DNA of 64,000 bases from Macrostomum lignano. Lineage: Eukaryota. The DNA lies in assembly GCA_002269645.1 (NCBI GenBank), contig NIVC01003307.1, forward strand, positions 1 to 64,000, given 5' to 3'. Shown here piece after piece: positions 8,490 to 48,900 of this stretch (its first letter is position 1; each line of letters opens with the position of its first letter). The notes beneath the pieces were generated by a model. The model was not told the origin of the DNA. It searched no databases and saw only the letters and a list, made by a program, of their open reading frames with translations. Both the position numbers and the translations under genes were made by a program.

Positions 8490-8910
8490 CTACAAGGCAA
8501 AAGCAGGACTAGGGAGATGTAGATAGGAATTATTTAAGTGGAACAAAATATATGAGTTAAATGGAAAAAATATTTTGAGAAGAGAATATTGAGACATAAG
8601 AGAGATGGAAAAATAGGGTAGACTGACGAAAAGCAGGGTAGAGATGGGGCAGAGATGGTTGGAGATGAGAAAGAAAAGAGATGTGTTCGGGAATGGGAGA
8701 CAGAAGAGCTGGAAGACTGTGCATGGAGCTGTACAGACAGAGATGGGTAAGAGATAGGAGAATGGGAAAAATGGGGGGGAGAATGGGACTGATAGTGGGA
8801 GAGATGGAGGACAATGAAGGAGAGATGGGGGAGTTGGATGAGAGAAGGAGGGTAAAAGGGAGAGAGAGAGAAGGGGAGATATGGTAGAGATAAAAGAGAA
8901 ATGAACGAGA

Positions 8911-8950
<40 letters not shown>
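8490..8950. repeat. GA-rich purine tract ending in (GA)n
   Basis: Low-complexity purine run; (GA)n at about 8914-8950. Confidence 0.8.
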
Positions 8951-8952
<2 letters not shown>

Positions 8953-9810
8953 TCGAGTATGTCTCGTAAGCTAGTCACTAAAGACAAAAAGCGATGGTGC
9001 GAACTAACCGACTATAAGACTCCGCACAACTCACCCCAAACGACTGTGGCGCAGCATTTGGTGAACAACCAAAAAAATTCCACGGCCAAGTCGTCGCCTC
9101 GAAACTCGACGCAGGCGAAATCGTCAGCTCAACTAAATGTGGATCTGGCGTGGCTCAGTGCTGGAACTGTCTGGTTTGCGCTCCGGCTGTCCTCGCGGTA
9201 TCTGCACAGCAGTGGCTGATCCAGTGAGCTCGCAGTTCAGTCAGCAGCGAGATGTTTCTCTACTTGGATTTTCAGAGTCAGATAAGAAGTACGCTCGTAG
9301 CTATGCTGTATCCCGAACCTGTTTAGCCTCTGAATACCCTGTGATTTACGATTATCTGCACTGCAATCAAACCAAATTGGTATTCTCAAGCCTGACCCAC
9401 CATTCATTCAATGTATTCAATCTGCTCATAATTAATCTTAATTTCTAAGCCAACCCAGTCACTGGACTAAATCGCAAATCCAATAGCTGTCAATTTGTTT
9501 TATTCTCGGATCCTACAACTCCGAATTATTAGCGTGAACGCCATCATTATCTGTTTTTGTCCTGGCTTCAGTGTGCGAGCCAAAGTCTCCAAAATGCGAG
9601 GAGAGAGAGCGACAGTTTCGGTACTAAAAAATAAAGTACTTTGCCGGTTCCGGCCTCGTTTGCGCCACCTGTTCGCTTACTGTTTTCTATGCCCCTCACT
9701 GAACGGAATTTATGCAACGTAAATCAAGAAATCGATATTAAACTGTATAATTTGTATGCATAAAAACAAAAAGGAAAATTGAGCATACAAAGCAGGCACT
9801 TTTACAAGCA

Positions 9811-9816
9811 TTTATT
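9811..9816 (-). terminator. Candidate AATAAA polyadenylation signal of LRRC40
   Basis: TTTATT on + strand about 280 nt past the stop; other ATTAAA/AATAAA hexamers also lie nearby. Confidence 0.35.
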
Positions 9817-10091
9817 ATTACATATTGATGCTGTGTGACATGAATGCTTAATACACAGAGCACTGGTACTGTACAGTCACAACGGACACCGTCGCATTCA
9901 CGGGTAAGTGAAACCTTAAAAATGAAGCTATTATCTCGATATTGACATCTCTGTGCACCTAAGCAAAGTCTTTGCTTGAAAATAAAAATCCTCAAATTTT
10001 TAATCTCATTTTGAATTGCAATAATGCTAAGCTGTAAACTACTTATTCGAGTAGTAATCATAGCGCACTAAATCTGTAATCAAATCCAATT

Positions 10092-28017: not shown

Positions 28018-31000
28018 ATGCGACGGTCCGGGGCGCCCAGTCAATCGGCCTATCAGTCCTGGCATCAGGCCAAGCGGCCCTGTCTCGCTCAGCAGCAGCA
28101 GCAGCAGCAACAGCCAAAACAACCAGCCAGCAGTGTCTGCTTGCGCGAATCTTCAAATAGTCAGGAACAGCAGCCGGGCTCTGGGGATGCGAAACCAGCT
28201 GCTGAGGGCAGGCAGTTTGCCTGCGTCTGGGGCAAGAACTCCGCCAAGAAGCACAAAGTGGGCCTTTCGTCTGGTTTCGTTCAATTGTCTAAGCCTTGTC
28301 CTCAGCCTCCCTGATCCTCAAGCCTCTCTAATCTTCAAGCCTCTAATCCTCAGACCTCCCTGATCCTCAGGCCTCCCTGATACTCAAGCCTCTCTTATCC
28401 TCAGTCTTCTCTAATCCTCAAGCCTCCCTAATTCTCAAGCCTCCCTAATTCTCAAGCCTCCCTAATCCTCAAGCCTCCCTAATTCTCAAGCCTCCCTAAT
28501 TCTCAAGCCTCCCTAATCCTCAAGCCTCCCTAATTCTCAAGCCTCTCTTATCCTCAGTCTTCTCTAATCCTCAGGCCTCCCTAATTCTCAAGCCTCCCTA
28601 ATCCTCAAGCCTCTAATTCTCAGTCTTCTCTAATCCTCAGGCCTCCCTAATTCTCAAGCCTCCCTAATCCTCAAGCCTCTAATTCTCAGTCTTCTCTAAT
28701 CCTCAAGCCTCCCTAATCCTCAAGCCTCCCTAATTCTTAAGCCTCCCTAATCCTCAAGCCTCCCTAATTCTCAAGCCTCCCTAATCCTCAAGCCTCTCTA
28801 ATCCTCAAGCCTCCCTAATCCTCAAGCCTCCCTAATTCTCAAGCCTCCCTAATCCTCAAGCCTCTCTAATCCTCAGTCTTCCCTAATCCTCAGTCTTCCC
28901 TAATCCTCAAGCCTCAACCCCCCCCCCCGGCCAACAGGTGTGGGAAGGCGACGGCCTGCTTCGTGTCCTCGGTGCCCGAACTGCCGTCCTGCTGGACGCA
29001 GCCACCGGCGCCGTGCTCGGCCGCGGCTGCGACCTAAAACCGGCTGAGCTGGCCGAGCTGGACGAGGGCTCCCGGCTCAGCCTGGGCGGCCGTCTGGTGG
29101 AAATCTGCGGCCCGGCCGGGCCCATCGAGGCTCCACCACAACCTTCGGCTAGGTGAGCTCCTTCTGTCCGACCATTCTCATGTCCCACCATTCTCATGTC
29201 CGACCATTCTCACGTCCGACCATTCTCATGTCCGATCATTCTCACGTCCGATCATTCTTATGTCCGATCATTCTCATGTCCGATCATTCTCATGTCCGAT
29301 CATTCTCATGTCCGATCATTCTCATGTCCGACCATTCTCATGTCCGATCATTCTCATGTCCGACCATTCTTATGTCCCATCATTCTGATGTCCGATCTTT
29401 CTCATGTCCGACCATTCTCATGTCCGACCATTCTCATGTCCGACCATTCTCACGTTCACTCTAACCCTAACTCTTTCTTAGCTCTCAGTCGAACTCAGAC
29501 CAGCCAGTAGCAGCTCAGCAGCCGCAGTCTTTGGACGGGCAGAACCTGTCTGAGCAGGCTGCCGCCACCGCCGCTGCTGTCGCCTGTCGCGCCCGCGCCG
29601 CCTTCAAACCGGTGGCTCTGTCCACCGCCGAGGCCGTCCCGCCGCCCCGCGTGCCGGCCGGCCTGGCTGCAGGCGTCGATCCGGACGCTTTCGTCCTGCC
29701 GCCGCCACCGCCGACGCTGCTCTGGGACCGGGACCGGGGCGCCGATACTAGGGATGTCGAAGCCGGCGACGATGGCGGCGAACTGTACGACGTAGTTGTC
29801 GATCGGCGTCTGACAGCCCGGCTGCGGAGGCATCAGCGCGACGGCGTGGCTTTTCTTTACTCCTGCGTGCTGGGCAGCCAGGTGGGGGGGGGGATTAAGT
29901 CTCTTCTCGAATGCTCGTATTCACGCAAAGTTCAAGACAAGGGGTAAATCTTTGTTGCGCACCTTCTCAGCCAAGAGTCAAATCGCCAGCTTTCCGGACC
30001 GTCAAGACATTCAAGGATTCTGCCAGAAGGTCGGCCATTCAGCACTTCCGCCTCAGTGCAGCCTTGCCAAGCCTCCAGATTTCATCAGCACGTCGGCTAA
30101 ATGTGTCTGCATGATCAGCTTTGGCTTCCTACACCCAGGCGTAGCTTCTGGACCTTCAACAGGTGGCACCAGTTGACTATGGACACCCTGTTGCGAATTT
30201 CGCTAGTTTCGCTGATCAAGCCTCGACAGTTGGCAAGCCTCAACTGCTGGACATCCTCAGCTGGTCTCTTGAGCATTCAGTCATCACCCCGACTCCGTCG
30301 ACACCTTCAGCAGATAATTGGCAGACCTCCACTGTTGGGTATCCTCAACTAGTCTTTCAGACGCTGTTTGCACCTTAAAGAGGGGAAACCGGGGGACTAT
30401 AAACCTTATAAACCTTAAGGGCCAGATAAAAAGTCTTGATGGTTGCTGCGGGCCAGATGAGAGTGGAAAGGAGATGAAATGGGGGAGAAAAAAGAAAGGA
30501 GAGATGAGAGATGACAAAATAGTTGGAGAGATGAGAGGCGACATGAGAGAAGAGATGAGATAAAAGATAAGATAGCGAAGTGAGGAGAGATGAGAGGAGA
30601 GACGAAAGGTGAGGAGATGAGAGAAGAGAGAGGAGATAAAATGCGATGAGAGGAGAGAGGAGATGAGAGGAGAGAGGAGATGAGAGGAGAGAGGAGATGA
30701 GAGGAGAGAGGAGATGAGAGGAGAGAGGAGATGAGAGGAGAGAGGAGATGACAGGAGAGAGGAGATGAGCTGAGAGAGGAGATGAGAGGAGAGAGGAGAT
30801 GAGAGGAGAGAGGAGATGAGAGGAGAGAGGAGATGACAGGAGAGAGGAGATGAGCTGAGATAAGAGAAGAGAAGAGAGGAGATGAGAGGAGAGAGGAGAT
30901 GAGATGCGATTAGAGGAGATAAGATGACAGAGGAGATGAGAGGAGAGAACTTAGAAGAGACACAAACCTTGAGCGGGCCAGATTGCTATTTTGCAGTTTC

Positions 31001-34000
31001 AAAGGACCCGAGGGCCGGATAGAGAGGCTTTGCGGGCCGCATGTGGCCCGCGGTCCGGAGTTTGCCGACCCCTGCTATAAACAGACTAGTGATATTAAAG
31101 AAGAGAGGGCTGGCGACTTGACTCTGGTTTGAGAGGGTGCGCAACAAAAAGTTAGCCCGTGTTCTAGAGATTTCGTGTGCCTGCATACGTTGCTCCGTTC
31201 TGGTGCAGCAAAAAATTGTCCGGGTAGGGGCGAAGGCGGAGAAAGTGTACATGCCTGACGAGTAGAGAGTCTGGGCCGCTGTAGCCGCTGTACACGCTGT
31301 GTCTGTTGTATACTCAGCAGCAACTTTGAAAGTCGCCACTCTATGCGCCAGTGAGCAATTTCTCTTGGACTATTCTGAAATAAAAGATGCGAGAAAACTG
31401 ATCGGGGCAGCTTTAATCCGTCCAACCCTCGCACACCGCTCCCTCCACTTCATTCCTCAACTCAAGTCTGCCGCGTGGCGTAGCTGAGTTGCGTCACTCG
31501 CAAAGATTGAGAGAATCCACCTGCACTCTCAAAACTGGCGATCACAGACGGAATCTTCTGTGATGGCGACTTTTCGATATTGCTGAGTAGGCATGACTGT
31601 CTGAGTAAGAAGTAACTGAGTCACAAAATATGTTCCCAGGTCCCGGGCAGCTATGGGGCCATCCTGGCGGACGCCATGGGCCTGGGCAAGACTCTGCAGT
31701 CCATCTCGTTGGTGTGGACTCTGCTGCACTCCAGCCCGTACAGCGCCACCAAGCCGCTGGTCCGTCGGGCGCTGATTGTGACGCCGGGCAGCCTGGTGGC
31801 CAATTGGAGGCTAGAATTCTACAAATGGCTGCCCTGGGCTCGATCCCTGCTGGACTCGAGAATGCTTTATTGCGTTGGTCACGAGGGCGCCAGGCCGGAG
31901 GACTATCGGGGCCAGGCTGTGCTGCTCATCAGTTATGAGATGCTGCTGAGATGGGCGGCAAGGCTCTCTGAGCATAGGTGGGTGTTGGTTTTTACTGTAC
32001 TTTTTTGGTTTTGGTTTTTACTGGTTTTTAAAAGTCTGTACTTTTTCCATTGGTTTTTTCAGGAATTTCACAGGTACTATAAAATTATAGGTTACGATTA
32101 AAGTGTGAGAAAAGACAGAGCGTCTACTATTTTTCAGTAGTTTGTCTGCGCAGTACCATTTAAATTTAATGTGACAGCTAAAATGACGTTTCATTCCTCG
32201 GGTTTTGTGGCCTCTGGTAAGGTTAAGAATGAACATCAAGCATCTAACTCGATGTACACAAGTGATCGCAAGACGGACGAAACTCAGCCTAGCAGGCAGG
32301 ACCAATGTGACTCAGCTAAAGAGAGAGCAGTATGAATAGAGGTCAAAGTCAGACGGACGAAACTCAGCCGGGGGGGAGGAGGGTAGGCCCAATCTAGCTC
32401 AGCCAATGAGAGAGCAGTAAGGAGAGAGGTCCAAGTCAGACGGACGGAACTCAGCCGGGGGGCAGGCCCAATCTAGCTCAGCCAATTAGAGAGCAGTAAG
32501 GAGAGAGGTCCAAGTCAGGCGGACGAAAATCGTTATTTGAATCTTTGTGGGCATCAGAATTCACCCGCTTTCCCGCACCGATCAGCTTCGACCTGTTGAT
32601 CTGCGACGAAGGCCACAGGCTGAAAAACGCGGCCACCCAGACAGCGCAGGCCCTGGCGGCGGTTGGCGCCAAACGCAGAATTGTCCTGACGGGCACGCCG
32701 GTGCAGAACGACCTGGACGAGCTGTACACCCTGGTTGATTTCGTCAGCCCCGGCCGTCTGGGCAACTGGCCGCAGTTTCGGGCCGCCTTCGTTGAGCGCA
32801 TCGCCGCCGCGGCCGACTCCGCCGCCACGGAGGACCAGCTGGACAAGGGCCGGGCGGCGGCTGAGAAGTTCGTGCGAAACCTGACCATGCTGACTCGATC
32901 TGCATGTAGTCCTGATTTTCAATTAGATATGGGGACCGGATTTGCTGCCGCCCAACTCCAGCTCCGATATTTCACTCCTCAGCTCTGCATCTTCTATACC
33001 ATCCTTGACCCCATCCTTAATAACTCCATTCTAAACCCCTTTGAATTCCATCTTCTAGTTCTACCATATCCTTGACCCCGACCTCAACACGATCTTCTAT
33101 TTCAATCCTATACTCGTCCTACATTTCATCCTCGACCCCATCCCATTCTCAACGCCATCCCATTCTCTACCCCATCCTCAACCCCATCCTCAGCCCCTCC
33201 TCAGCCCCACCGTAAGACCCCATCCTCAATCCCGTCCTCAGCCCCATTATAAGACCCCATCCTAAGACCCCATCCTCAAACCCATCCTCAGCCCCATCCT
33301 CAACCCCATCATAAGACCCCATCCTCAGCCCCATCCTCAACCCCATCATAAGACCCCATCCTCAGCCCCATCCTCAACCCCATCCTCAACCCCATCCTCA
33401 ACCCCATTCTCAACCCCATCTTCAACCCCGTCAGCCCCATCCTCAACCCCATCTTCAACCCCATCCTCAGCCCCATCCTCAACCCCATCATAAGACCCCA
33501 TCCTCAGCCCCATCCTCAACCCCATCATAAGACCCCATCCTCAGCCCCATCCTCAACCCCATCCTCAACCCCATCCTCAACCCCATCTTCAACCCCGTCA
33601 GCCCCATCCTCAACCCCATCTTCAACCCCATCCTTAGCCCCATCCTCAACCCCATCTGCAACCACATCCTCAGCCCCATCCTCAACCCCATCCTCAACCC
33701 CATCCTCAACCCCATCCTCAACCCCATCCTCAGCCCCATCCTCAACCCCATCCTCAGCCCCATCCTCAACCCCATCCTCAACCCCATCCTCAACCCCATC
33801 CTCAGCCCCATCCTCAACCCCATCCTCAACCCCATCCTCAACCCCATCTTCAGCCCCATCCTCAACCCCATCCTCAGCCCCATCCTCAACCCCATCTTCA
33901 ACCACATCCTCAGCCCCATCCTCAACCCCATCCTCAACCCCATCCTCAACCCCATCCTCAACCCCATCCTCAGCCCCATCCTCAACCCCATCCTCAGCCC

Positions 34001-37000
34001 CATCCTCAACCCCATCTTCAACCCCATCCTCAACCCCATCCTCAACCCCATCCTCAACCCCATCCTCAACCCCATCCTCAGCCCCATCCTCAACCCCATC
34101 CTCAACCCCATCCTCAGCCCCATCCTCAACCCCATCCTCAGCCCCATCCTCAACCCCATCCTCAACCCCATCCTCAACCCCATCCTCAACCCCATCCTCA
34201 GCCCCATCCTCAACCCCATCCTCAGCCCCATCCTCAACCCCATCCTCAGCCCCATCCTCAACCCCATCTTCATCCACATCCTCAGCCCCATCCTCAACCC
34301 TATCCTCAACCCATCCTCAGCCCCATCCTCAACCCCATCTTCAACCCCGTCAGCCCCATCCTCAACCCCATCTTCAACCCCATCCTCAGCCCCATCCTCA
34401 ACCCCCGTCAGCTCCATCCTCAACCCCATTGTTCTGTTGTTGAATTAACGAGCGCAGAAACAAGATAGATAATTATCCGGGCGCCCAGTGGCACCAAAAG
34501 AGGGTTTGGCCAATAGGAGGGCGGCTCGTATATTTATGCACGCGGGGAAGGAAAGTTCTAGAAAGACCGGGAGAGGAAACTTCTGGAACTATGCGTAAAC
34601 AAGTCCTGCTGTGGAAGTTTCTAGAAACCATGTCCCCGAACTATCCCTACGCATAGCATGCCTTTGCAATACACAACACCCATCCCCAACCCCATCCTCA
34701 ACCCCATTCTAAGACCCCTTAAATCTCGGACACGGAGGCACCAGCAGGCCCCACAAACACCACCCCACACCAGACTGAGCCGCCTCATCGCCCCAATGGT
34801 GCTGCGCCGATGCCACGAGGACATCGACTCTGCCGGCAGCCTGCCGCCGAAGCGCGAACTGGTAATCTTCTGCCGGCCGTCCGACCTTCAACGCCGCCTA
34901 TTCGACGTCGTGTGCGGCTGCGCCGCCGCCGTCGAGGTGCTGTCGGACGAGCTGGGCCACACGGCCCGCCTAGCTGATGGTGAGCACCTGCGCCTCATCG
35001 GGCTGCTGCGCAAGGTGGCCAGCGATCCCGCTTTGCTGCATGCGCATCTGGTCGCTGTAAGTAGTAGGCTGCGCACGCTTTGCTTGGTGTCAAGGTTTTC
35101 TATTTTTCCCCGGCTTTTACTGATGGTTCCAGTGGCACTATGAAGAGATCCCATCTTCCCCCGTAGATCCCATCCTCACCTAGGAGATCCCATTCTCACC
35201 TAGAAGATCCCATTCTCACCTAGAAGATGCCATTCACACCTAGAAGATCCCATCGTCACCTAGAATATCCCATCCTCACCTAGGAGATCCCATCCTCACC
35301 TAGGAGATCCCATTCTTACCTAGGAGATCCCATCCTCATCCCGAGAGATCCCATCCGCATCCCCAGAGATCCCATCCGCATCTCGAGAGATCCCATCCCC
35401 ACCCCAACCATCCCATCAATATCTGGCACTAATTTAGAAAGAAACACCTGTACAAGTTCTGTTAATCATCCATAATTTTCCCGCTATTCCCCACGATCCG
35501 CCAGAAGCAGCAAGCCGCTGGCGGGAGGGGCGGCAACAGCAAAAACTACGACGACTTGTCCCGCCAGCTGATGTCGGAGTTTCCGCTAGACTTCGACGCC
35601 GACGGCGGCTTGAACGAATTGATCGATGACAATCTCGTAGCCACTTCCTCGTCCGGCAAGCTGTCGGTGACGTCCCATCTGCTGCAGCGCATCTGCCGCG
35701 GCCGCAGGCGCAACTGCGTCCTGGCGTCGAATTCTACGAAGACGCTGGACCTGCTGGGCCGCCTGTGCGCCGCCCTCGGCTTGGCCAGCCTGCGCCTGGA
35801 CGGTGCTACGCCGACGGCGACTCGTCAGCGGCTTGTCGATCAGTTCAACGACACCCGCTGCGTCGGCGTCGGCGGCGGCCGGGTCCTCCTGCTCAGCACC
35901 AAAGCCGGCGGAGTCGGCCTGAACCTGACGGGTGCCAGCGACTTGATTCTATTCGATATCGACTGGAATCCGGCCAACGATGCCCAGGCTACGGCTAGGA
36001 TCTGGCGGGAGGGGCAGCGGAGGCCGTGCAGCGTCTACAGGCTGCTGACCGCGGGCAGCATTGAGGAGCGAATCTTTCTCAGACAGGTTCTCAGGCGCTG
36101 CTTTGGCTGGTTTTCTGCTTCACTGATCTCAGTTTTTCATACAGTAGTCTGTCACTCTGTCAGGTATTCTGACATTGTCAGTAGTCTGTAACTCTGTCAG
36201 GTATTCTGACATTGTCAGTAGTCTGTCACTCTGTCAGGTATCCTGACACTGTCAGTAGTCTGTCACTCTTCTGTCAGAAGTATCCTGACACTGTCAGTAG
36301 TCTGTCACTCTGTCAGGTATCCTGACACTGTCAGTAGTCTGTCACTCTTTGTCAGAAGTATACTGTCACTGTCAGTAGTATGTCACTCTTTGTCAGAAGT
36401 ATACTGTCAGTAGTATGTCACTCTTTGTCAGAAGTATACTGTCACTGTCAGTAGTATGTCACTCTTTGTCAGAAGTATACTGTCAGTAGTATGTCACTCT
36501 TTGTCAGAAGTATACTGTCACTGTCAGTAGTATGTCACTCAGTCGGGTATCCTGACACTGTCAGTAGTCTGTCACTCAGTCGGGTATCCTGACACTGTCA
36601 GTAGTCTGTCACTCAGTCGGGTATCCTGACACTGTCAGTAGTATGTCACTCTTTGTCAGAAGTATACTGTCACTGTCAGTAGTATGTCACTCTTTGTCAG
36701 AAGTATACTGTCACTGTCAGTAGTATGTCACTCAGTCGGGTATCCTGACACTGTCAGTAGTCTGTCACTCAGTCGGGTATCCTGACACTGTCAGTAGTCT
36801 GTCACTCAGTCGGGTATCCTGACACTGTCAGTAGTATGTCACTCTTTGTCAGAAGTATACTGTCACTGTCAGTAGTATGTCACTCTTTGTCAGAAGTATA
36901 CTGTCACTGTCAGTAGTATGTCACTCTTTGTCAGAAGTATATTGTCACTGTCAGTAGTCTGTCACTCTTTGTCAGTAGTCTGTCACTCTTTGTCAGTAGT

Positions 37001-37613
37001 CTGTCACAAAACGGTTTATTTCCACCCGGTCTCCATGGCAAAAAACACACCCATTCTCCAGGTGAAGAAGCTCGGCCTATCCCGGAGCATCCTGGACTCG
37101 GCCTCTGGCGCCGCGTCCGCTTTGATTAGCGGAGCCAACGGCTCCAAGAAGTCGTCGACGCCCCGATTCACTCGGCAAGAGCTGGCCGAGTTGTTCACCT
37201 TTGTCGGCGACACCGACTGCCTCGCTCACGACTGTCTCAACTGCCGTTGCCTCGGAAGCGGTGGGGGCGACGACGAACAGCCGGCAGCTCCGCCGCAGCA
37301 GCCCCCGCCTGCGCCGGCGGCCGTTCGCCGATGCCAGCTGGGCTACAATTTTGCTGACAGCGAAACCGCGTCGACGCTTCTGGAATCAACGACTGATCGG
37401 CGACAGCGCGGCGGCGGCGGTGGCGGACCTGTCGGCAGCGGCGGTCTGGCTCTGCTGTCCGACTGGCATCACGTGTCTGCGGCGGCGGCTGCTGCTTCCG
37501 GCAGCGACTTTGCAGGTTTCGGCGGCTTCGAACAGACTTTGATGGCAGCTGGCGACTCGGTCAGCTTCGTGATGTGGCACGAGGTTGGCGGCTGGGAGGC
37601 TGCGAGTGACTGA
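28018..37613 (+). CDS. RAD54B: DNA repair and recombination protein RAD54B (SNF2 family); exons 28018-28257, 28938-29152, 29482-29881, 31640-31977, 32586-32867, 34774-35056, 35505-36086, 37062-37613
   Basis: RAD54B-type N-terminus MRRSGAPSQ and KKHK|VWEGDG; helicase motifs LADAMGLGKT, DEGHRLKN, TGTPVQNDL, STKAGGVGLNL, WNPANDAQATARIWREGQ. Splice phases are consistent (0,2,0,2,2,0,0); the exon 5 donor (GTTCGT) is the least certain. Confidence 0.9.
28300..28915. repeat. 17-bp minisatellite in RAD54B intron 1
   Basis: Unit CTCAAGCCTCCCTAATY. Confidence 0.96.
29167..29455. repeat. 16-bp minisatellite in RAD54B intron 2
   Basis: Unit TCCGAYCATTCTCATG. Confidence 0.96.
30640..30950. repeat. 12-bp GA-rich array in RAD54B intron 3
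   Basis: Unit GAGAGGAGATGA. Confidence 0.93.
31010..31074 (-). mobile_element. hAT (Charlie/MER58-like) transposon terminus
   Basis: Minus strand CAGGGGTCGGCAAACTCCGGACCGCGGGCCACATGCGGCCCGC resembles hAT-Charlie ends; partner end and 8-bp TSD not found. Confidence 0.5.
32270..32525. repeat. Degenerate tandem repeats in RAD54B intron 4
   Basis: Recurring CTCAGC..A.GAGAG(A)GCAGTA...GAGGTC.AAGTCAG.CGGACG.AA blocks. Confidence 0.75.
33170..34430. repeat. 12-bp minisatellite in RAD54B intron 5
   Basis: Unit A(A/G)CCCCATCCTC. Confidence 0.98.
35145..35400. repeat. 20-bp minisatellite in RAD54B intron 6
   Basis: Unit GATCCCATYCTCACCTAGRA. Confidence 0.92.
36140..37005. repeat. 35-41-bp variant minisatellite in RAD54B intron 7
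   Basis: Unit GTCAGTAGTCTGTCACTCTGTCAGGTATCCTGACACT and variants. Confidence 0.95.
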
Positions 37614-37644: not shown

Positions 37645-38375
37645 TGAGAATCTGCCTCTCCGCTCCATCATTCCTTGAGAATCTGCCTCTCCGCTCCATC
37701 AGTCCTTGAGAATCTGCCTCTCCGCTCCATCAGTCCTTGAGAATCTGCCTCTCCGCTCCATCATTTATTGAGAATCTGCCTCTCCGCTCCATCATTTCTT
37801 GAGAATCTGCCTCTCCGCTCCATCATTTATTGAGAATCTGCCTCTCCGCTCCATCATTTATTGAGAATCTGCCTCTCCGCTCCATCATTTCTTGAGAATC
37901 TGCCTCTCCGCTCCATCATTCCTTGAGAATCTGCCTCTCCGCTCCATCATTTCTTGAGAATCTGCCTCTCCGCTCCATCATTTATTGAGAATCTGCCTCT
38001 CCGCTCCATCATTTCTTGAGAATCTGCCTCTCCGCTCCATCATTTCTTGAGAATCTGCCTCTCCGCTCCATCATTTCTTGAGAATCTGCCTCTCCGCTCC
38101 ATCAGTCCTTGAGAATCTGCCTCTCCGCTCCATCAGTCCTTGAGAATCTGCCTCTCCGCTCCATCAGTCCTTGAGAATCTGCCTCTCCGCTCCATCATTT
38201 CTTGAGAATCTGCCTCTCCGCTCCATCAGTCCTTGAGAATCTGCCTCTCCGCTCCATCAGTCCTTGAGAATCTGCCTCTCCGCTCCATCATTTCTTGAGA
38301 ATCTGCCTCTCCGCTCCATCAGTCCTTGAGAATCTGCCTCTCCGCTCCATCAGTCCTTGAGAATCTGCCTCTCCC
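37645..38375. repeat. 31-bp minisatellite starting about 30 nt after the RAD54B stop
   Basis: Unit TTGAGAATCTGCCTCTCCGCTCCATCAKTYC. Confidence 0.97.
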
Positions 38376-38984
38376 TCCAACAAACCAGTGATTTAATTTT
38401 CCAAACTTGATGCTTTGCTCTGTTTATGTACTCGTATCCCAATTTTCCTGGCATTTTTTGCTTTCAGAAGCAAGCCCTGCGTCAGTTAGAGTTTCTCCTC
38501 GGTCGATTTAGCTTGTCGATTATTAGTTTTTTTTTGCTTTGTCTTCTGCGAATAATTTGGCTAATTTTCTGCTTTCGCATTTCCCCCGATTATTTTTTCC
38601 TTCTAATTGCTCGACACAGGTGGGCAAATTGCTTCAGCAAATGCAATTTAGCAATTAGCAGGTGTTGTTGTTACTGCCAACTTGCCGGGCGAGTTTCTGC
38701 AACAAGTTTTATTGCTTTTCTGCCTTTTCTGAAAAAAATTTTTTATAATTCCTAAGGAAGTCAAATCTGCTCAACTCTTGCAAAAAGCTGCAAGTGCAAA
38801 AGTTTTCAAGCTTTTCCCCTCTTTGCTGGGCTTTTGAGCATTCGAAAAAGTCAAATAAAATCTTGCTTTTAACTTATTTTTTGACACGATTTTCAGTTGC
38901 CAATTTGGCTCAGTCTAATAATATCCTGCTCACTGTTTTGCTCCCTGGCTACCACCACTAACTTCATCTTCTTCTACTACTCTC

Positions 38985-39400
38985 CCCATTCTCCCAGCTC
39001 CACATTCTCCCCATTCCCCACCTCCACATTCTCCCCATTCTTCCATCTCCATATTCTCCCACCACGTTCTCCCCATTCTCCCTCCTCCACATTCTCCCCA
39101 TTCCCCACCTCCATATTCTCCTCATTCTCCCCATGCTCCCATCTCCCCATTCTCCCATCTTCCCATTCTCCCCATTCTCCATTCTCCCCATTCTCCATTC
39201 TCCCCATTCTCCCATCTTCCCATTCTCCCCATTCTCCCATCTTCCCATTCTCCCCATTCTCCCATCTTCCCATTCTCCCCATTCTCCCATCTTCCCATTC
39301 TCCCATCTTCCCATTCTCTCCATTCTCCCATTTCCCCATTCTCCCATTCTCCACATTCACCCACCTCCCCATTCTCCGCATTCTCCCATTTCCCCGTCTT
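38985..39400. repeat. Pyrimidine-rich 9/17-bp array upstream of the OXSM 5' acceptor
   Basis: Unit CCCCATTCTCCCATCTT and variants. Confidence 0.93.
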
Positions 39401-39440
39401 CCCCACTATCAAAATCCCAACCGCTCCCAAACGATTGCAG

Positions 39441-40076
39441 AGCGGCTGCCGTCGAGTTGTGATCACCGGCCTCGGGCTGGCCGCCCCAGTCGGCGCCGGC
39501 TGGCGCACAGTCTGGGCGCAAGTGCTTGCCGGCCGGCCAAATTTCGGTCGTCTGTCCGAGGCGGACGGCTACTCTGGACTGCCCTGCCGAGTGGCCGGCC
39601 TGATCCCCGAGCCCGAGCTGTCCGGCTGGCCGAGCTGGCAGTTTGACAAGCGAAACCGTGCCGAGATGTCCCGCGCCTCCGCTCTGGCGCTGGCAGCGGC
39701 GCGCGAGGCTGCCCAAGGCGCCGATTTGGCCGGGATGCGACGGCGCTCGCCGGACTCGCTGATCGGCGTGGCCATCGGCTGCGGCATGGACGGGCTGGAG
39801 ACGGCGGTGGACGCCGGCGTCGGGCTGCGCAGCGGACGCGGCTACGCGGAGGTCGGGCCGCACTTCCTCACCAAGCTGCTCAACAACATGCCGGCCGGCC
39901 GGGTGGCCATCGAGTTCGGCGCCACTGGGCCCTGTCTGGCGCCGAATTCCGCGTGCGCCAGCGGCGCCGACGCTATTGGCGCCGCGTTTCGACTGGTGCG
40001 CGACGGAATCGTGGATGCGGCCCTGTGCGGCGGCACCGAGGCCTGCATTGGCCCGCTTGCGGTGCGTGCGTGTCTG

Positions 40077-40143
<67 letters not shown>

Positions 40144-43100
40144 GTCTGTCTGTCTGTCCGTGCTCGCCAAGAACTCAGCATCCGTTATGTGCGTTGCCCA
40201 TCCCACCAGCCGATTAAATTTAATTCAAATCTCCCTCAGGTGGCGGCCTTCAGTCGCGTCCGCGCCCTGGCTACTCGCTTCAACGACAATCCGCTGGCAG
40301 CTTCGCGGCCTTTCGATGCCGACCGGTGCGGATTCGTCATGTCGGAGGGCGCCGGCGTGCTGGTGCTGGAGGCCCTGGACTCCGCGCTGGCCAGAGGCGC
40401 CCCGGCGCCAATCGCTGAAGTCCTTGGCTACGGCGCCGCCTGCGATGCGCATCATCTGACGGCGCCGAAGCTGGGCGGCGACAGCGGCGCCAGGCGCTGC
40501 ATGCTGGCCGCGCTTCGGGAAGCCGGCAACCACTCTGGTAGTTATTAGTGCCTTGTCTGCTTCTATCTTGTCTGCTTCCATCTTGCTTCCACCTGATCTG
40601 CTTCCACCTGATCTGCTTCCACCTGATCTGCTTCCACCTGATCTGCTTCCACCTGATCTGCTTCCACCTGATCTGCTTCCACCTGATCTGCTTCCACCTG
40701 ATCTGCTTCCACCTGATCTGCTTCCACCTGATCTGCTTCCACCTTGTCTGCTTCCATTTTCTCTGCTTGCACCTTGTCTGCTTCCATTTAGTCTGCTTCC
40801 ACCTGATCTGCTTCCATTTAGTCTGCTTCCACCTTGTCTGCTTCCACCTTGTCTGCTTCCATTTTGTCTGCTTGCACCTTGTCTGCTTCCATTTAGTCTG
40901 CTTCCACCTTGTCTGCTTCCACCTTGTCTGCTTCCACCTTGTCTGCTTCCACCTTGTCTGCTTCCACCTTGTCTGCTTCCACCTTGTCTGCTTCCACCTT
41001 GTCTGCTTCCACCTTGTCTGCTTCCACCTTGTCTGCTTCCACCTTGTCTGCTTCCACCTTGTCTGCTTCCACCTTGTCTGCTTCCACCTTGTCTGCTTCC
41101 ACCTTGTCTGTTCCCTCTGGTAAATAAAACAGATAACACCACAAGATAATTTGCGAATCTTGTCAGATTCACTACCGATTTCCTTGTTTGAGGTGCGAAA
41201 CTGGTGAAACCACCAGATTCGTCACCAGGTAATTTTAGTGTTATCTGATTTGTCTGTTATCTGGTGAGTTATCTGAATTTCACCAGATAACATGGCCCGA
41301 ATCTTGCTGAGTAATCAGATTACACGACAAGATTCGCCACCAGGTAATTTTTTGTTTTCTTGTTTGACTGTTATCTGGTGAGTTATCTGAAATTCGCAGG
41401 ATAACATGGCGCGAATCTTGTTTGAAAGACAGATAACAGTACAAGATTCGCCACCAGATAATTCTCTGTTATCTTGTTTGATTGAATCTTGTTTGAATCG
41501 GAATTTCACAGGATAACATGGCGCGAATCTTGTTTGAAAATCAGATAACAGTACAAGATTTAAATCGAGATAACTGTGTGTCATCTAGTCTGTAAGAAAC
41601 CTGTGTGAATCTGAAATTTACCGGATAACATGATGCGAATCTGGTTTGCAAACCAGATAATGGAAAATATTTCAATCAAGATGTGTTATCCGGTTTGTAA
41701 GACCCCGTTGTACTTTTCACCCAGAATTTTTTCCAGAATTTCGTGATCCAGACCCGATTTATTAATTGATTTCCAAGTGAAGGCCCGGATCAGCATTTTT
41801 GGCCCGGAATAGCCCCTTTTTCCGGAAATGTGATCCTGCAAAAGTTCGGGAAAAAGGAAAGCTGTTCCGGCTGCATTTTCCAAAATGAAATCAATCCTCG
41901 CTTCTGTTGTGGCTCAAGGCAGCTTTTATAAGCTGACCTGCGATGGATAATCAATCCTCGCTTCTGTTGTGGCTCAAGGCAGCTTTTATAAGCTGACCTG
42001 CGATGGATAATCAATCTTCGCTTCTAGTGTGGCTCAAGGCAGCTTTTATAAGCTGACCTGCGATGGAAATCAATCCTCGCTTCTAGTGTGGCTCAAGGCA
42101 GCTTTTATAAGCTGACCTGCGATGGATAATCAATCCTCGCTTCTAGTGTGGCTCAAGGCAGCTTTTATAAGCTGACCTGCGATGGAAATCAATCCTCGCT
42201 TCTGTTGTGGCTCAAGGCAGCTTTTATAAGCTGACCTGCGATGGATAATCAATCCTCGCTTCTGTTGTGGCTCAAGGCAGCTTTTATAAGCTGACCTGCG
42301 ATGGATAATCAATCCTCGCTTCTAGTGTGGCTCAAGGCAGCTTTTATAAGCTGACCTGCGATGGAAATCAATCCTCGCTTCTAGTGTGGCTCAAGGCAGC
42401 TTTTATAAGCTGACCTGCGATGGATAATCAATCCTCGCTTCTAGTGTGGCTCAAGGCAGCTTTTATAAGCTGACCTGCGATGGATAATCAATCCTCGCTT
42501 CTGTTGTGGCTCAAGGCAGCTGATGAGCTGACCTGCGAGGGGTAAAGTGCCATATATCAGCAAACGCTAGCGCTCGTAATGTGAGGCCGTGCCACAAACA
42601 AGATAACAAAAAGGATAACACGATGTTTCCCTGCAGGATTCGCATGAATTACCCGACTGTTACCTGGTCAACGAATCCTGTTTGCCAGACAGGATAACAA
42701 ACAAGATAACAAAAAGGATAACACGATGTTTCCCTGCAGGATTCGCATGAATTACCCGACTGTTACCTGGTCAACGAATCCTGTTTGCCAGACAGGATAA
42801 CAAACAAGATAACAAAAAGGATAACACGATGTTTCCCTGCAGGATTCGCATGAATTACCCGACTGTTACCTTAGTCAGCGAATCCTGTTTGCCAGACAGG
42901 ATAACAAACAAGATAACAAAAAGGATAACACGATGTTTCCCTGCAGGATTCGCATGAATTACCCGACTGTTACCTGGTCAACGAATCCTGTTTGCCAGAC
43001 AGGATAACAAACAAGATAACAAAAAGGATAACACGATGTTTCCCTGCAGGATTCGCATGAATTACCCGACTGTTACCTGGTCAACGAATCCTGTTTGCCA

Positions 43101-44062
43101 GACAGGATAACAAACAAGATAACAAACAGGATAACACGGTGTTTCCCTGCAGGATTCGCATGAATTACCCGACTGTTACCTGGTCAACGAATCCTGTTTG
43201 CCAGACAGGATAACAAACAAGATAACAAACAGGATAACACGGTGTTTCCCTGCAGGATTCGCATGAATTACCCGACTGTTATCTGGTCAGCAAATCCTTT
43301 TTGAATCTTGTTTGAAACAAGGAAACGTAAGATTTCGTCACGCAAACAAGATTCATACAAGATAACATTTTGCATAACCGGAATAGGGCATGTTATCTTG
43401 TTTGAGCGAATGTTATCTTGTGGTGTTATCTGGTTTATTTACCAGAGGGTTTCCACCTGATCTGCTTCCATTTAGTCTGCTTCCACCTTGTCTGCTTCCA
43501 CCTTGTCTGCTTCCACCTTGTCTGCTTCCACCTTGTCTGCTTCCACCTTGTCTGTTTCCACCTTGTCTGCTTCCACCTTGTCTGCTTCCACCTGATCTGC
43601 TTCCACCTTGTCTGCTTCCACCTTTTTTTTGCAGCAGCTTGGCAGCGGCCGCTCGCCCTCCAGGTTGGCCACGTGAACGCGCACGCCACTTCGACTCCGA
43701 TTGGCGACTCCGCCGAATGGCTGGCCATCGAGTCGCTGCTGAGCGGCGTTGACGCCTCCGTCATCCAGCCAGGCTGCCTGGTGGCTTCGTGCAAAGGCGC
43801 CCTCGGCCACCTGATCGGAGCTGCCGGCGCTGTGGAGGCCGCGCTGACTGCGCTGTCCTGCCAGACTGGCCGCGTGCCGCCCACGGCTAATCTGGCGCGG
43901 CCCGACCTGCCGACAGCGTCGGAGTCGCTCCGTCTGGTGCCCGACGGTCCGCCGGCGGATTGGCCGACTAATCCAGCGGACGGTCGGCGGGTTGCTCTGA
44001 GCAACAGCTTCGGGTTCGGTGGCGTCAACGCTTCGCTGTGTATTGCCAGTTACCTGCCCTGA
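39441..44062 (+). CDS. OXSM: 3-oxoacyl-ACP synthase (OXSM/FabF-type ketosynthase); exons 39441-40061, 40240-40537, 43635-44062; no genomic ATG at the 5' end
   Basis: RRVVITGLG, NSACASG (catalytic Cys), SRPFDADRCGFVMSEGAGVLVLE, NAHATST (His), KGALGHLIGAAG (His), SNSFGFGGVN. Intron phases 0 and 1. Confidence 0.92.
40070..40160. repeat. (GTCT)n microsatellite in OXSM intron 1
   Basis: Direct observation. Confidence 0.97.
40549..43622. repeat. 15-bp minisatellite in OXSM intron 2, split by a transposon into 40549-41112 and 43450-43622
   Basis: Unit CCTTGTCTGCTTCCA / CCTGATCTGCTTCCA on both sides of the insertion. Confidence 0.95.
41113..43449. mobile_element. Non-autonomous TIR transposon (CACTA/EnSpm-like) carrying internal 60-bp and 103-bp satellites
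   Basis: 37-bp TIR CCCTCTGGTAAATAAA(A/C)CAGATAACACCACAAGATAA; 2-bp TT duplication restores CTGTTTCCA; many subterminal AGATAAC motifs; 60-mer at 41890-42530 and 103-mer at 42595-43290; no transposase. Superfamily is inferred. Confidence 0.85.
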
Positions 44063-45979: not shown

Positions 45980-48900
45980 TCAATGTACACTAGCCAGTCC
46001 TTGGGGTGTTGGGCGGCTGGGGTAAGAGGTAATTGATTGGCTTCTGTGGCGTTTTAGAATTTTATATGCTTGCTAATGTACATTGGCCACTAGCCTGTCC
46101 TTGGGGTGTTGGGCGGCTGGGGTAAGAGATAATTGATTGGCTTCTGCGGTGTTTTAGAATTTTATATGCTTGCTAATGTACATTGGCCACTAGCCTGTCC
46201 TTGGGGTGTTGGGTGGCTGGAGTAAGAGATAATTGATTGGCTTCTGCGGTGTTTTAGAATTTTATATGCTTGCTAATGTACATTGGCCACTAGCCAGTCC
46301 TTGGGGTGTTGGGCGGCTGGGGTAAGAGATAATTGATTGGCTTCTGCGGCGTTTTAGAATTTTATATGCTTGCTAATGTACATTGGCCACTAGCCAGTCC
46401 TTGGGATGTTGGGCGGCTGGGGTAAGAGATAATTGATTGGCTTCTGCGGCGTTTTAGAATTTTATATGCTTGCTAATGTACATTGGCCACTAGCCTGTCC
46501 TTGGGGTGTTGGGTGGCTGGGGTAAGAGATAATTGATTGGCTTCTGCTGTGTTTTAGAATTTTATATGCTTATGTACATTTTATATGCTAATGTACATTG
46601 GCCACTAGCCTGTCCTTGGGGTGTTGGGCGGCTGGGGTAAGAGGTAATTGATTGGCTTCTGCAGCGTTTTAGAATTTTATATGCTTGCTAATGTACATTG
46701 GCCACTAGCCTGTCCTTGGGGTGTTGGGCGGCTGGGATAAGAGATAATTGATTGGCTTCTGCGGCGTTTTAGAATTTTATATGCTTGCTAATGTACATTG
46801 GCCACTAGCCAGTCCTTGGGGTGTTGGGCGGCTGGGGTAAGAGATAATTGATTGGCTTCTGCGGCGTTTTAGAATTTTATATGCTTGCTAATGTACATTG
46901 GCCACTAGCCTGTCCTTGGGGTGTTGGGTGGCTGGGGTAAGAGATAATTGATTGGCTTCTGCGGTGTTTTAGAATTTTATATGCTTATGTACATTTTATA
47001 TGCTAATGTACATTGGCCACTAGCCTGTCCTTGGGGTGTTGGGCGGCTGGGGTAAGAGATAATTGATTGGCTTCTGCGGCGTTTTAGAATTTTATATGCT
47101 TGCTAATGTACATTGGCCACTAGCCTGTCCTTGGGGTGTTGGGCGGCTGGGGTAAGAGATACATACATACATACATGTACACCGCCGCAAAAGAAAGCAA
47201 AAGGAAAAGGGGGCAGCACGGGACGGAAGAGCAAAAAAAAGGGGGAAAAGAAACGGAAATGTGAGAGCGTGGCGGCAGTGTCAGAGCACTCTCCTTCTGG
47301 CTTGCTCCCTGAAGGCAGCCGCAGCGTTGGTCTGGCCGATGACACCGGCGTCAGCCAGCAGGCAGTCCACGTACCGGCGCGTCCTGGCCTGCCTCGGCGC
47401 CAGGGGCCCCGCAGCGTGAGCAGCAGGACGTCCTGCACCGGTTCAGGGCAGTAGGTTTCGGCGCGGATCACGTGGCCCGCCAGCTGCAGCCGCCGCCGCC
47501 GGATGGTCTCGCTGGGTGGTCGCAGGCCGGCTCGTCGTAGAGGGCCGCGTTCGAGACCACCTCAGGGTAGGAGATGCCGAAGGCCGCGCGCAGCAGGCTG
47601 GAGTGGGCCGCGTCCAGCCGCTTCTCCAGCGTCTCGGTCAGCGTCCACGTCTCGGCGTTGTAAGTCAGGACGGTCTCGACCACCGCCTGAAACAGCCGAG
47701 ACCTCAGGCGATCTGGCAGCGCGGCGCTCTGCAGAACAACCCGGACTGAGCGGAAGGCCGCCCAAGCCAGGCCTCTGCGTCGCGCCAGGTCCTCCTGAAC
47801 GCTGGGCACCAGACCGCCGAGGTACGTGAAGCGCGTGCAGCGGGGTAGAGGGGCCGCGTGACCGTCTGCGCCGCGGCAGGTGATATTGGCAGGCAGCTCC
47901 GCTGGCACCGTCAGGACCTCCGTCTTGTCGGTGTTAACAACCAGGCCGACCGTAGCCGCTATCGCCACCAGGCTGTCCAGCATCCGCTGGGCTCCATCCG
48001 CCGTGGAGGCCAGCAGCGCCAGGTCGTCGGCATAGCCCAGCAGCGACAGTCTCTTCTCTGGATGGCGGCTGCTCGTGCGCCTGCACAGCATGAAGCCGTC
48101 GGCGTCGGATGGAAGCGCAGTCCGCAGCACCCAGTCGTAAGAGATAATTGATTGGCTTCTGCGGTGTTTTAGAATTTTATATGCTTGCTAATGTACATTG
48201 GCCACTAGCCTGTCCTTGGGGTGTTGGGCGGCTGGGGTAAGAGATAATTGATTGGCTTCTGCGGTGTTTTAGAATTTTATATGCTTGCTAATGTACATTG
48301 GCCACTAGCCTGTCCTTGGGGTGTTGGGCGGCTGGGGTAAGAGGTAATTGATTGGCTTCTGCGGTGTTTTAGAATTTTATATGCTTATGTACATTTTATA
48401 TGCTAATGTACATTGGCCACTAGCCTGTCCTTGGGGTGTTGGGCGGCTGGGGTAAGAGATAATTGATTGGCTTCTGTGGCGTTTTAGAATTTTATATGCT
48501 TGCTAATGTACATTGGCCACTAGCCTGTCCTTGGGGTGTTGGGCGGCTGGGGTAAGAGGTAATTGATTGGCTTCTGCGGTGTTTTAGAATTTTATATGCT
48601 TGCTAATGTACATTGGCCACTAGCCTGTCCTTGGGGTGTTGGGCGGCTGGGGTAAGAGATAATTGATTGGCTTCTGCGGCGTTTTAGAATTTTATATGCT
48701 TGCTAATGTACATTGGCCACTAGCCTGTCCTTGGGGTGTTGGGCGGCTGGGGTAAGAGGTAATTGATTGGCTTCTGCGGCGTTTTAGAATTTTATATGCT
48801 TGCTAATGTACATTGGCCACTAGCCTGTCCTTGGGGTGTTGGGCGGCTGGGGTAAGAGATAATTGATTCGCTTCTGCGGTGTTTTAGAATTTTATATGCT

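What the first reader, a model, noticed from the sequence alone, without database searches (positions are those of the whole stretch)
38985..39470. OXSM has no start codon of its own; a spliced-leader AUG would fit exactly
Seen: the ketosynthase frame opens at a phase-0 acceptor (ACGATTGCAG|AGC GGC TGC CGT CGA GTT GTG) after a 400-nt AG-free pyrimidine array. The first in-frame ATG lies inside the catalytic domain (about 39666). The two upstream donor-like sites I checked (38619, 38661) have an in-frame stop before any ATG. Known: flatworm spliced leaders end in AUG, which can act as the initiator. Inference: trans-splicing yields MSGCRRVVITG..., making translation obligately SL-dependent and leaving no obvious mitochondrial presequence.
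Basis: partly seen in the sequence, partly recalled or inferred. Interest (0 to 1): 0.7.

Follow-up and report, generated by a model that had tools for sequence, protein, structure and literature searches.

The report
Flatworm OXSM gene started by spliced-leader AUG
The mitochondrial-type ketoacyl synthase (OXSM) gene of the flatworm Macrostomum lignano has no start codon of its own and almost certainly borrows the AUG at the end of the worm's trans-spliced leader, a mechanism described in flatworms in 2006, so this is an ordinary new example.

Summary
The window is the first 64 kb of Macrostomum lignano contig NIVC01003307.1. A three-exon OXSM orthologue (39441-40061, 40240-40537, 43635-44062) opens at a TTGCAG acceptor. 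There is no in-frame ATG until codon 76, and the ketoacyl-synthase domain already starts at codon 4 of the exon.

- The published M. lignano spliced leader ends in ...TTGCATG. Joined at 39441 it reads MSGCRRVVITG.
- All three homeologous gene copies share the acceptor and the ATG-less start, and all look selectively maintained.
- No conserved cis exon could supply an in-frame ATG. One copy has no candidate in 2.6 kb.
- Every public model is 5'-partial. The UniProt models begin exactly at the acceptor.
- I could reach no RNA reads.

Two points deflate the finding. Initiation at the leader's AUG has been established in flatworms since Cheng et al. 2006. A short N-terminus with no presequence is normal for invertebrate and fungal OXSM/CEM1 orthologues. 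The "AG-free pyrimidine array" is a minisatellite whose AG-free run varies from 441 to 931 nt between copies. The gene lies 677 repeat-adjusted nt downstream of a RAD54B-like gene, which fits the distance part of the published operon criterion.

Verdict: a new member of a known kind, of low interest.

The parts
28018..37613 (+). Upstream same-strand gene, a RAD54B-like SNF2 helicase. It has its own ATG (MRRSGAPSQ...) at 28018 and its stop codon at 37611-37613. It is the likely first gene of a two-gene transcription unit.
   Evidence: Pfam SNF2-rel_dom, ResIII and Helicase_C on the called gene. RAD54-like names on the relatives found. ATG position. Stop codon read from the sequence.
37645..38379 (.). 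A 31-bp tandem array (23.7 copies) in the intergenic region or outron.
   Evidence: TRF.
38380..38980 (+). Unique, AT-rich intergenic or outron segment. It holds the two donor-like sites (exon ends 38619 and 38661), neither preceded by an in-frame ATG. It is 97.6-98.4% identical between homeologs, and its first ~92 nt are absent from copy L001.
38981..39395 (+). Pyrimidine-rich minisatellite (TCTCCCCAT)n. Its length is not conserved between copies.
   Evidence: TRF. AG-free runs of 441, 842 and 931 nt in L003, L001 and L002.
39396..39440 (+). Unique 45 nt ending in the acceptor TTGCAG (39435-39440). It is identical in all three copies and is the inferred trans-splice acceptor.
   Evidence: The trans-acceptor motif [T/C]TNCAG is from PMC8629364.
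39441..40061 (+). OXSM exon 1 (207 codons, phase 0). It starts SGCRRVVITG, and the ketoacyl-synt domain begins at its 4th codon.
39666..39668 (+). First genomic in-frame ATG (exon codon 76). Starting here would delete about 71 of the 252 positions of the N-terminal ketoacyl-synt domain.
40240..40537 (+). OXSM exon 2. It carries the first catalytic His, in the motif DAHHLTAP.
43635..44062 (+). OXSM exon 3, including the TGA stop at 44060-44062. It carries the second catalytic His (VNAHATSTP) and the NSFGFGG motif.
   Evidence: The gene end agrees with the NCBI model.

Best explanation
The gene is the Macrostomum lignano orthologue of mitochondrial 3-oxoacyl-ACP synthase (OXSM/CEM1, KAS II type).

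Proposed mechanism:
1. Its pre-mRNA carries no initiator codon.
2. The sequence upstream of 39441 is an outron.
3. The 35-nt spliced leader (CGGTCTCTTACTGCGAAGACTCAATTTATTGCATG) is trans-spliced onto the TTGCAG acceptor.
4. The leader's 3'-terminal AUG becomes the first AUG of the mRNA, in frame.
5. Translation gives a 449-residue enzyme starting MSGCRRVVITG.

The gene probably sits as the downstream member of a RAD54B-like/OXSM transcription unit that trans-splicing resolves.

Shown here: the gene structure, the frame, the absence of any usable genomic ATG, the leader sequence (from the literature), conservation of the arrangement in three copies, and the orthologue-like N-terminal length.

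Inferred: that trans-splicing happens at this acceptor, that the leader AUG is the initiator, operon membership, and mitochondrial import without a cleavable presequence.
For: 1. Identity. The best named relatives are animal mitochondrial OXSM at 42-48% identity. The best solved structure is human mitochondrial ketoacyl synthase 2C9H/2IWY, E 1.6e-89. Pfam ketoacyl-synt and Ketoacyl-synt_C both match. The Cys-His-His motifs are present.

2. The domain alignment begins at residue 5 of the protein numbered from the leader Met (profile position 2 of 252). The N-terminus therefore has to lie at or just before the acceptor, and Met76 cannot give a complete fold.

3. The M. lignano leader ends in ATG and is followed by a GTAAG donor. 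About 30% of M. lignano genes are trans-spliced, and the trans-acceptor motif is [T/C]TNCAG, here TTGCAG (PMC8629364). The leader has only that one ATG, and it is in frame.

4. No cis alternative. In the 1827-nt intergenic region there are only 6 ATG-to-GT phase-0 combinations, all with donor matches of 2 of 6 or fewer. Copy L001 has none in 2575 nt. The one candidate with a decent donor, in L002, depends on a copy-specific 1-nt deletion.

5. The three homeologous copies share an identical acceptor and an ATG-less start. Their ORFs are intact, with 0.7-0.9% CDS divergence against 1.6-2.4% in the intergenic segment. Synonymous:non-synonymous codon changes are 5:4, 7:2 and 8:4.

6. Public models. 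UniProt A0A1I8G1G1, A0A1I8IIW1 and UPI0007A2E60F all begin SGCRRVV, exactly at the acceptor. NCBI PAA52056, PAA57390 and PAA52871 are flagged 'partial' and start 21-36 nt downstream. None has an upstream exon.

7. Orthologues with their own ATG start 1-12 residues before RRVV[VI]TG. Two crabs/shrimps have the same 4-residue spacing (MGCVRRVVVTG, MGSMRRVVVTG).

8. Precedent. In S. mansoni the leader AUG is in frame in 28% of trans-spliced transcripts, and more than 40 cDNAs need it (Cheng et al. 2006, as reported in PMC9851317 and PMC12582326). PMC10468722 calls the Macrostomum leader's final ATG a translation start codon.

9. The repeat-adjusted distance to the upstream gene is 1827-735-415 = 677 nt, below the published 1-kb operon threshold.
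Against: - No RNA read, cDNA or peptide spanning the leader-exon junction could be obtained. No Logan transcript-derived protein for this gene is in the collection, and the gene is not in the supplementary tables I searched.
- The NCBI models begin 21-36 nt inside the exon, not exactly at the acceptor. That annotation therefore does not itself document a leader peak at this site.
- The leader AUG has a weak Kozak context, with U at -3.
- A multi-exon 5' region lying further upstream, for instance within the RAD54B-like gene, was not excluded exhaustively.
Confidence: 0.8

Rival explanations
1. An unannotated cis-spliced upstream exon supplies the ATG and perhaps a mitochondrial presequence. 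It would lie in the 585-nt unique intergenic segment, further upstream, or in unassembled sequence. On this reading the public models are simply 5'-truncated.
For: The public models are flagged partial. Vertebrate and insect OXSM carry presequences of 35-58 residues. Two donor-like sites exist at 38620 and 38662. In copy L002 an ATG is in frame with the first of these.
Against: The window copy has an in-frame stop before both donors. L001 has no ATG-to-GT phase-0 candidate at all, although its ORF is equally maintained. The L002 peptide is F/L-rich translated T-rich DNA and depends on a 1-nt indel. Three loci and two annotation efforts found no upstream exon. Close invertebrate orthologues have no presequence either.
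Confidence: 0.08
2. Translation does not use a leader AUG. Either it starts at a near-cognate codon on an unspliced or differently processed transcript, or it starts at Met76 and gives a truncated, probably inactive protein. In the second case the locus would be drifting toward a pseudogene.
For: There is no genomic ATG before codon 76. The upstream frame is open through the satellite. An aberrant isoform lacking both catalytic His is on record (P0002).
Against: All three copies keep an intact 448-codon frame with an excess of synonymous change. Residues 5-75 align to the structured core of the human OXSM and bacterial FabF structures. The upstream open frame has a different length in each copy and encodes satellite. 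A leader ending in AUG is available and in frame.
Confidence: 0.05
3. The gene is trans-spliced as proposed but has its own promoter in the unique 585-nt segment. It would then be a monocistronic trans-spliced gene, not part of an operon with the RAD54B-like gene.
For: Most trans-spliced M. lignano genes (about 60%) are not in operons (PMC8629364). The raw intergenic distance is 1.8-2.6 kb. The AT-rich unique segment is conserved between copies.
Against: The repeat-adjusted distance of 677 nt is under the published 1-kb operon threshold. No AATAAA or ATTAAA follows the RAD54B-like stop codon in two of the three copies. Conservation between such recent duplicates says little either way.
Confidence: 0.35

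Closest known systems
Flatworm mRNAs initiated at the spliced leader's 3'-terminal AUG (Cheng, Cohen, Ndegwa & Davis 2006, J Biol Chem 281:733; called 'slORFs' in PMC9851317)
   Same: The leader ends in AUG, and the acceptor is in phase 0 with a conserved ORF that lacks its own initiator. The leader AUG would be the first AUG of the mRNA.
   Different: The species is a free-living macrostomid, not Schistosoma, and the gene (OXSM) is different. Here neither the trans-splicing event nor the translation has been demonstrated.
Mitochondrial 3-oxoacyl-ACP synthase: human OXSM (PDB 2C9H, 2IWY), yeast CEM1, bacterial FabF (KAS II)
   Same: Two ketoacyl-synthase domains, the Cys-His-His motifs, the RRVVITG N-terminal strand, and 42-48% identity to animal OXSM.
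   Different: Vertebrate and insect OXSM have a 35-58-residue presequence. This protein has 4 residues before the fold, like crustacean, mollusc, annelid and fungal orthologues. Its initiator Met is not encoded at the locus.
M. lignano operons resolved by leader trans-splicing (Ustyantsev & Berezikov 2021, PMC8629364)
   Same: The neighbour is on the same strand, the repeat-adjusted gap is under 1 kb, the downstream gene starts at a [T/C]TNCAG acceptor, and repeats inflate the intergenic distance.
   Different: A polycistronic precursor spanning these two genes has not been seen here.

Membership tests
Leader-AUG-initiated flatworm mRNA | The organism's spliced leader ends in AUG immediately before its donor site | tested here: met
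   The organism was identified as M. lignano. The leader CGG...TTGCATG, followed by GTAAG, is reported in PMC8629364. No leader RNA gene lies in the window, so this rests on the literature.
Leader-AUG-initiated flatworm mRNA | The mRNA is trans-spliced to the leader at the acceptor in question | not testable with these tools
   No RNA reads or cDNA were reachable. The support is indirect: UniProt models start exactly at 39441, the acceptor motif matches, and there is no upstream cis donor with an open frame.
Leader-AUG-initiated flatworm mRNA | The leader AUG is in frame with the conserved ORF | tested here: met
   Leader plus exon 1 translates to MSGCRRVVITGLGLAAPVGAG. The neighbouring AG acceptor at 39443 would give an out-of-frame product ending in a stop.
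Leader-AUG-initiated flatworm mRNA | No genomic in-frame AUG can give the complete conserved protein | tested here: met
   The first in-frame ATG is codon 76 in all three copies. There is no in-frame ATG upstream in the window copy or in L001. The domain starts at residue 5.
Leader-AUG-initiated flatworm mRNA | Translation actually starts at the leader AUG | not testable with these tools
   This needs Ribo-seq, N-terminal proteomics or a reporter assay.
OXSM / KAS II condensing enzyme | Ketoacyl-synt N- and C-terminal domains | tested here: met
   PF00109 at 1.5e-45 (residues 5-256) and PF02801 at 7.4e-23 (residues 267-394).
OXSM / KAS II condensing enzyme | Catalytic Cys-His-His motifs | tested here: met
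   SACASG (starts at residue 171), DAHHLTAP (277) and VNAHATSTP (321) align to the corresponding motifs of human OXSM 2C9H.
OXSM / KAS II condensing enzyme | Closest relatives are mitochondrial OXSM, not cytosolic FAS or a bacterial contaminant | tested here: met
   The top named hits are animal 'mitochondrial 3-oxoacyl-ACP synthase'. The gene is spliced and sits in a flatworm contig.
OXSM / KAS II condensing enzyme | Mitochondrial localisation | not testable with these tools
   No targeting predictor was available. The first 40 residues carry 5 Arg and no Asp or Glu, like the crab and shrimp orthologues. This is suggestive only.
M. lignano operon (criterion of PMC8629364) | Adjacent same-strand genes with a repeat-adjusted intergenic distance under 1 kb | tested here: met
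   1827 nt minus TRF arrays of 735 and 415 nt leaves 677 nt.
M. lignano operon (criterion of PMC8629364) | The downstream gene is trans-spliced, or a polycistronic precursor exists | not testable with these tools
   No RNA data were reachable.

The most novel reading that the evidence does not exclude
OXSM expression in M. lignano is gated entirely at RNA processing. On this reading an unspliced or polycistronic precursor cannot be translated into enzyme. The basic, acid-free first ~40 residues of the thiolase fold itself serve as an uncleaved mitochondrial import signal. The AG-poor minisatellite abutting the acceptor is retained because it keeps a single unambiguous trans-splice site. Mitochondrial fatty-acid and lipoate synthesis would then be coupled to trans-splicing capacity, which is reported to be enriched in neoblast genes.
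Probability: 0.1. Interest if true: 0.45.

Novelty: new member of a known kind. Interest (0 to 1): 0.22.

Why it matters
The main value is practical. All six public models of this gene (three UniProt, three NCBI) are 5'-partial because annotation pipelines trim or ignore the leader's ATG. Adding the leader-derived Met completes the protein to 449 residues. This is a clean, conserved-enzyme example showing that genome-only gene finding in Macrostomum, and in flatworms generally, will systematically miss start codons. It also shows that 'partial' flags on trans-spliced genes may mark complete proteins. It reminds annotators that OXSM/CEM1 orthologues in many invertebrates and fungi lack a cleavable presequence. 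It does not open a new mechanism.

Tried and rejected
- Transcript evidence through the protein collection. A search with the N-terminal 135 residues found no M. lignano fragment. The P0001 cluster holds only UniProt, NCBI and UniParc models and no Logan transcript. I therefore judged an exact look-up of 'M+protein' pointless and did not run it.
- Supplementary tables of three M. lignano papers, searched for Mlig013427 and OXSM. Nothing was found. A full-text search for the locus tag gave 0 papers.
- Locus tag of the upstream gene, which would have shown whether it shares a transcription-unit name with OXSM. The short-query search returned only similar-length fragments from other organisms.
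- Closest non-Macrostomum homologue, P0004 (Logan contig L004). I checked it for a leader-type 5' end. It has its own ATG (MGGMRRVVVTG) and an ordinary 5' UTR, so it says nothing about conservation in flatworms. P0028 (L005) was fetched but not pursued.
- Leader RNA gene in the window: none.
- The idea that sense-strand AG avoidance is a general property of satellites in transcribed regions. I rejected it because a purine-rich array with 112 AG lies in a RAD54B-like intron.
- Conservation of the unique intergenic segment as a test for a hidden exon. This is uninformative, because the copies are about 98% identical everywhere.

Full report
**Where we are.** The window is the first 64 kb of Macrostomum lignano contig NIVC01003307.1 (assembly Mlig_3_7, GCA_002269645.1). 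Locus L003, fetched through the NCBI protein PAA52056, matches window 29462-54062 with identical coordinates.

**The gene.** Three exons (39441-40061, 40240-40537, 43635-44062) have canonical boundaries (cag|...|gtgcgt, cag|...|gtagtt, gcag|...TGA). They encode 448 residues.
- The product matches Pfam ketoacyl-synt (residues 5-256 when numbered from an added Met; profile 2-251 of 252) and Ketoacyl-synt_C.
- Its best solved relatives are human mitochondrial beta-ketoacyl synthase 2C9H/2IWY/9N50 (E 1.6e-89), ahead of bacterial FabF.
- Its best named relatives are animal 'mitochondrial 3-oxoacyl-ACP synthase' at 42-48% identity.
- The Cys-His-His motifs SACASG, DAHHLTAP and VNAHATSTP are intact.
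It is the OXSM orthologue.

**Checking the observation.**
- The acceptor reads ...aacgattgcag|AGC GGC TGC CGT CGA GTT GTG.
- Only one AG (38996) lies between 38913 and the acceptor AG, which leaves 441 AG-free nt.
- Positions 38985-39440 are 83% pyrimidine.
- The frame is open upstream to TAA 38919 without an ATG.
- The first in-frame ATG is at 39666, codon 76.
- The two donor-like sites (exon ends 38619 and 38661) each have an in-frame TAG before any ATG.

One re-description is needed. The 'array' is a degenerate minisatellite, (TCTCCCCAT)n at 38981-39395. With only 9 G in 456 nt, the absence of AG is what the composition predicts.

**Is there a cis source of an ATG?** I scanned the whole 1827-nt interval between the stop codon of the upstream gene (37611-37613) and the acceptor. 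I looked for any ATG that runs open, in phase 0, to any GT. Six combinations exist. All match the donor consensus at 2 of 6 positions or fewer, and all use two ATGs at 38410 and 38426.

M. lignano is a hidden polyploid, and two further copies of the locus could be fetched: L001 (NIVC01002494.1) and L002 (NIVC01003172.1).
- All three copies have the identical last 49 nt before the exon, the same acceptor, and no in-frame ATG before codon 76.
- L001 lacks the segment that holds those two ATGs and has no ATG-to-GT phase-0 candidate in 2575 nt.
- L002 has one candidate ending at the better donor (CAG|GTGGGC). It exists only because of a copy-specific 1-nt deletion, and it encodes Phe/Leu-rich translated T-rich DNA.
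- The three coding sequences differ at 9-12 of 1348 nt (0.7-0.9%), with synonymous:non-synonymous codon changes of 5:4, 7:2 and 8:4. The unique intergenic segment differs by 1.6-2.4%.

All three copies therefore look maintained, and the only 5' feature they share is the acceptor.

**Does the leader fit?** Ustyantsev & Berezikov (PMC8629364) give the single M. lignano leader as CGGTCTCTTACTGCGAAGACTCAATTTATTGCATG, followed in the SL RNA gene by GTAAG. They report that about 30% of genes are trans-spliced. The top motif at trans-acceptors is [T/C]TNCAG, and here it is TTGCAG. The leader contains one ATG, at its very end. Joined at 39441 it reads ATG AGC GGC TGC CGT CGA = MSGCRR. Using the adjacent AG (exon start 39443) would be out of frame and would terminate. 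No SL RNA gene lies in the window.

**Do existing models agree?** All public versions lack a Met.
- Three UniProt/UniParc models (A0A1I8G1G1, A0A1I8IIW1, UPI0007A2E60F) begin SGCRRVV, exactly at the first codon after the acceptor.
- The three NCBI models are flagged 'partial' and begin 21 or 36 nt further in.
- None has an upstream exon.
- The Mlig_3_7 annotation mapped reads end-to-end after trimming leaders (PMC5730564). I infer that this explains the ragged 5' ends just inside a trans-spliced exon.

This is indirect evidence that the mature mRNA stops matching the genome at 39441. It is not a read-level demonstration.

**Is the resulting N-terminus sensible?** Yes. Among relatives with their own ATG, molluscs, annelids, a bryozoan, crustaceans, a red alga and many fungi start 1-12 residues before the RRVV[VI]TG strand. 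Examples are MSGISPSGRRVVVTG, MYGPRRVVVTG and MKRVVVTG. Two decapods have the same 4-residue spacing (MGCVRRVVVTG, MGSMRRVVVTG). Only vertebrates and insects carry extensions of 35-58 residues.

The first 40 residues of the M. lignano protein hold 5 Arg and no acidic residue, as in the decapods. Bacterial FabF-like sequences have 2-4 acidic residues there. 'No obvious presequence' is therefore the norm for this orthologue group, not a peculiarity created by trans-splicing. Whether the basic N-terminal strand acts as an import signal is my speculation.

**Context.** The upstream same-strand gene is a RAD54B-like SNF2 helicase. It has SNF2-rel_dom, ResIII and Helicase_C domains and RAD54-like relatives, with its own ATG at 28018 and its stop at 37611-37613. 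Subtracting the two tandem arrays (735 + 415 nt) from the 1827-nt gap leaves 677 nt. That is under the 1-kb repeat-adjusted threshold used to call M. lignano operons. No AATAAA or ATTAAA follows the RAD54B-like stop in two of the three copies. A two-gene transcription unit is plausible, but a separate promoter in the 585-nt unique segment is not excluded.

**Comparison with what is known.** That the flatworm leader's 3'-terminal AUG serves as initiator is established. Cheng et al. 2006 found it in frame in 28% of S. mansoni trans-spliced transcripts and required by more than 40 cDNAs (as summarised in PMC9851317). PMC12582326 and PMC5832876 say the same. For Macrostomum, PMC10468722 explicitly labels the leader's final ATG a translation start codon and mentions the annotation problems it causes. 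The present case meets every membership feature I could test: leader ends in AUG, AUG in frame, no own AUG. The two experimental features, trans-splicing at this site and initiation at the leader AUG, remain untested.

**Verdict.** The main rival, a hidden cis exon, I put at about 0.08. Non-AUG or Met76 initiation I put at about 0.05. The finding is a new example of a known mechanism and is useful mainly for correcting six 5'-partial public gene models. Interest is low.

**What failed.** No transcript-level data could be reached: there were no Logan-derived proteins for this gene, nothing in the supplementary tables, and no paper mentioning the locus tag. The search meant to recover the upstream gene's locus tag returned only foreign fragments. 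The closest non-Macrostomum homologue turned out to have an ordinary ATG and 5' UTR.

Noticed in passing
window 38981-39395; L001 ~8848-9979; L002 ~8686-9964: The pyrimidine minisatellite just upstream of the OXSM acceptor differs about 2.5-fold in length between the three homeologous copies, while the 45 nt next to the acceptor are identical. The satellite-to-acceptor distance is 480, 1133 and 1280 nt. The AG-free runs are 441, 842 and 931 nt.
   Followed up: yes
whole window: 24.4 kb of the 64 kb (38%) lies in tandem arrays with periods of 4-200 bp. Every intron of OXSM and several of the RAD54B-like gene are filled with them. The two arrays that abut acceptors (38981-39395 and 43451-43624) have one AG each. 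A sense-strand purine array with 112 AG (30587-30948) shows there is no general AG avoidance.
   Followed up: partly
L002 8153-8345 (equivalent to window 38426-38619): A 1-nt deletion specific to copy L002 puts an ATG in frame with the CAG|GTGGGC donor and creates a 64-codon potential 5' exon. This frame is closed by a stop in the window copy, and the ATG is absent from L001.
   Followed up: yes
window 40419|40420 and 43732|43733: UniProt A0A1I8IIW1 (376 aa) joins ...APAPIAE to SLLSGVD..., using a GT inside exon 2 and an AG inside exon 3. This removes 72 residues, including both catalytic histidines. It is probably an aberrant or non-functional splice isoform.
   Followed up: partly
window 49772-51736 (-): A 654-codon uninterrupted ATG-initiated ORF, Cys-rich at its N-terminus and low-complexity Pro/Ala-rich elsewhere. 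It has no Pfam hit and was not among the genes listed as called in the NCBI record for this stretch. An old 757-aa UniParc model (UPI0007A2E60F) fuses OXSM to the antisense of this region, which looks spurious.
   Followed up: partly
window 47471-48130 (-): A reverse-transcriptase fragment (RVT_1, 29.2 bits, just under the 29.6 cut-off). It is a retroelement remnant flanked by 200-bp-period arrays.
   Followed up: partly
window 61700-64000: A 17-bp satellite (TGAAGATTATTGATTGG)n fills the last 2.3 kb. It accounts for the GC of 0.28 and the GC skew of +0.84 in the final bin.
   Followed up: yes
window 21955-26078 (+): Several GC-rich open frames encode Glu/Arg/Leu-rich, coiled-coil-like sequence upstream of the RAD54B-like gene on the same strand. 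There are no Pfam hits for the two largest pieces. It may be another member of the same transcription unit.
   Followed up: no
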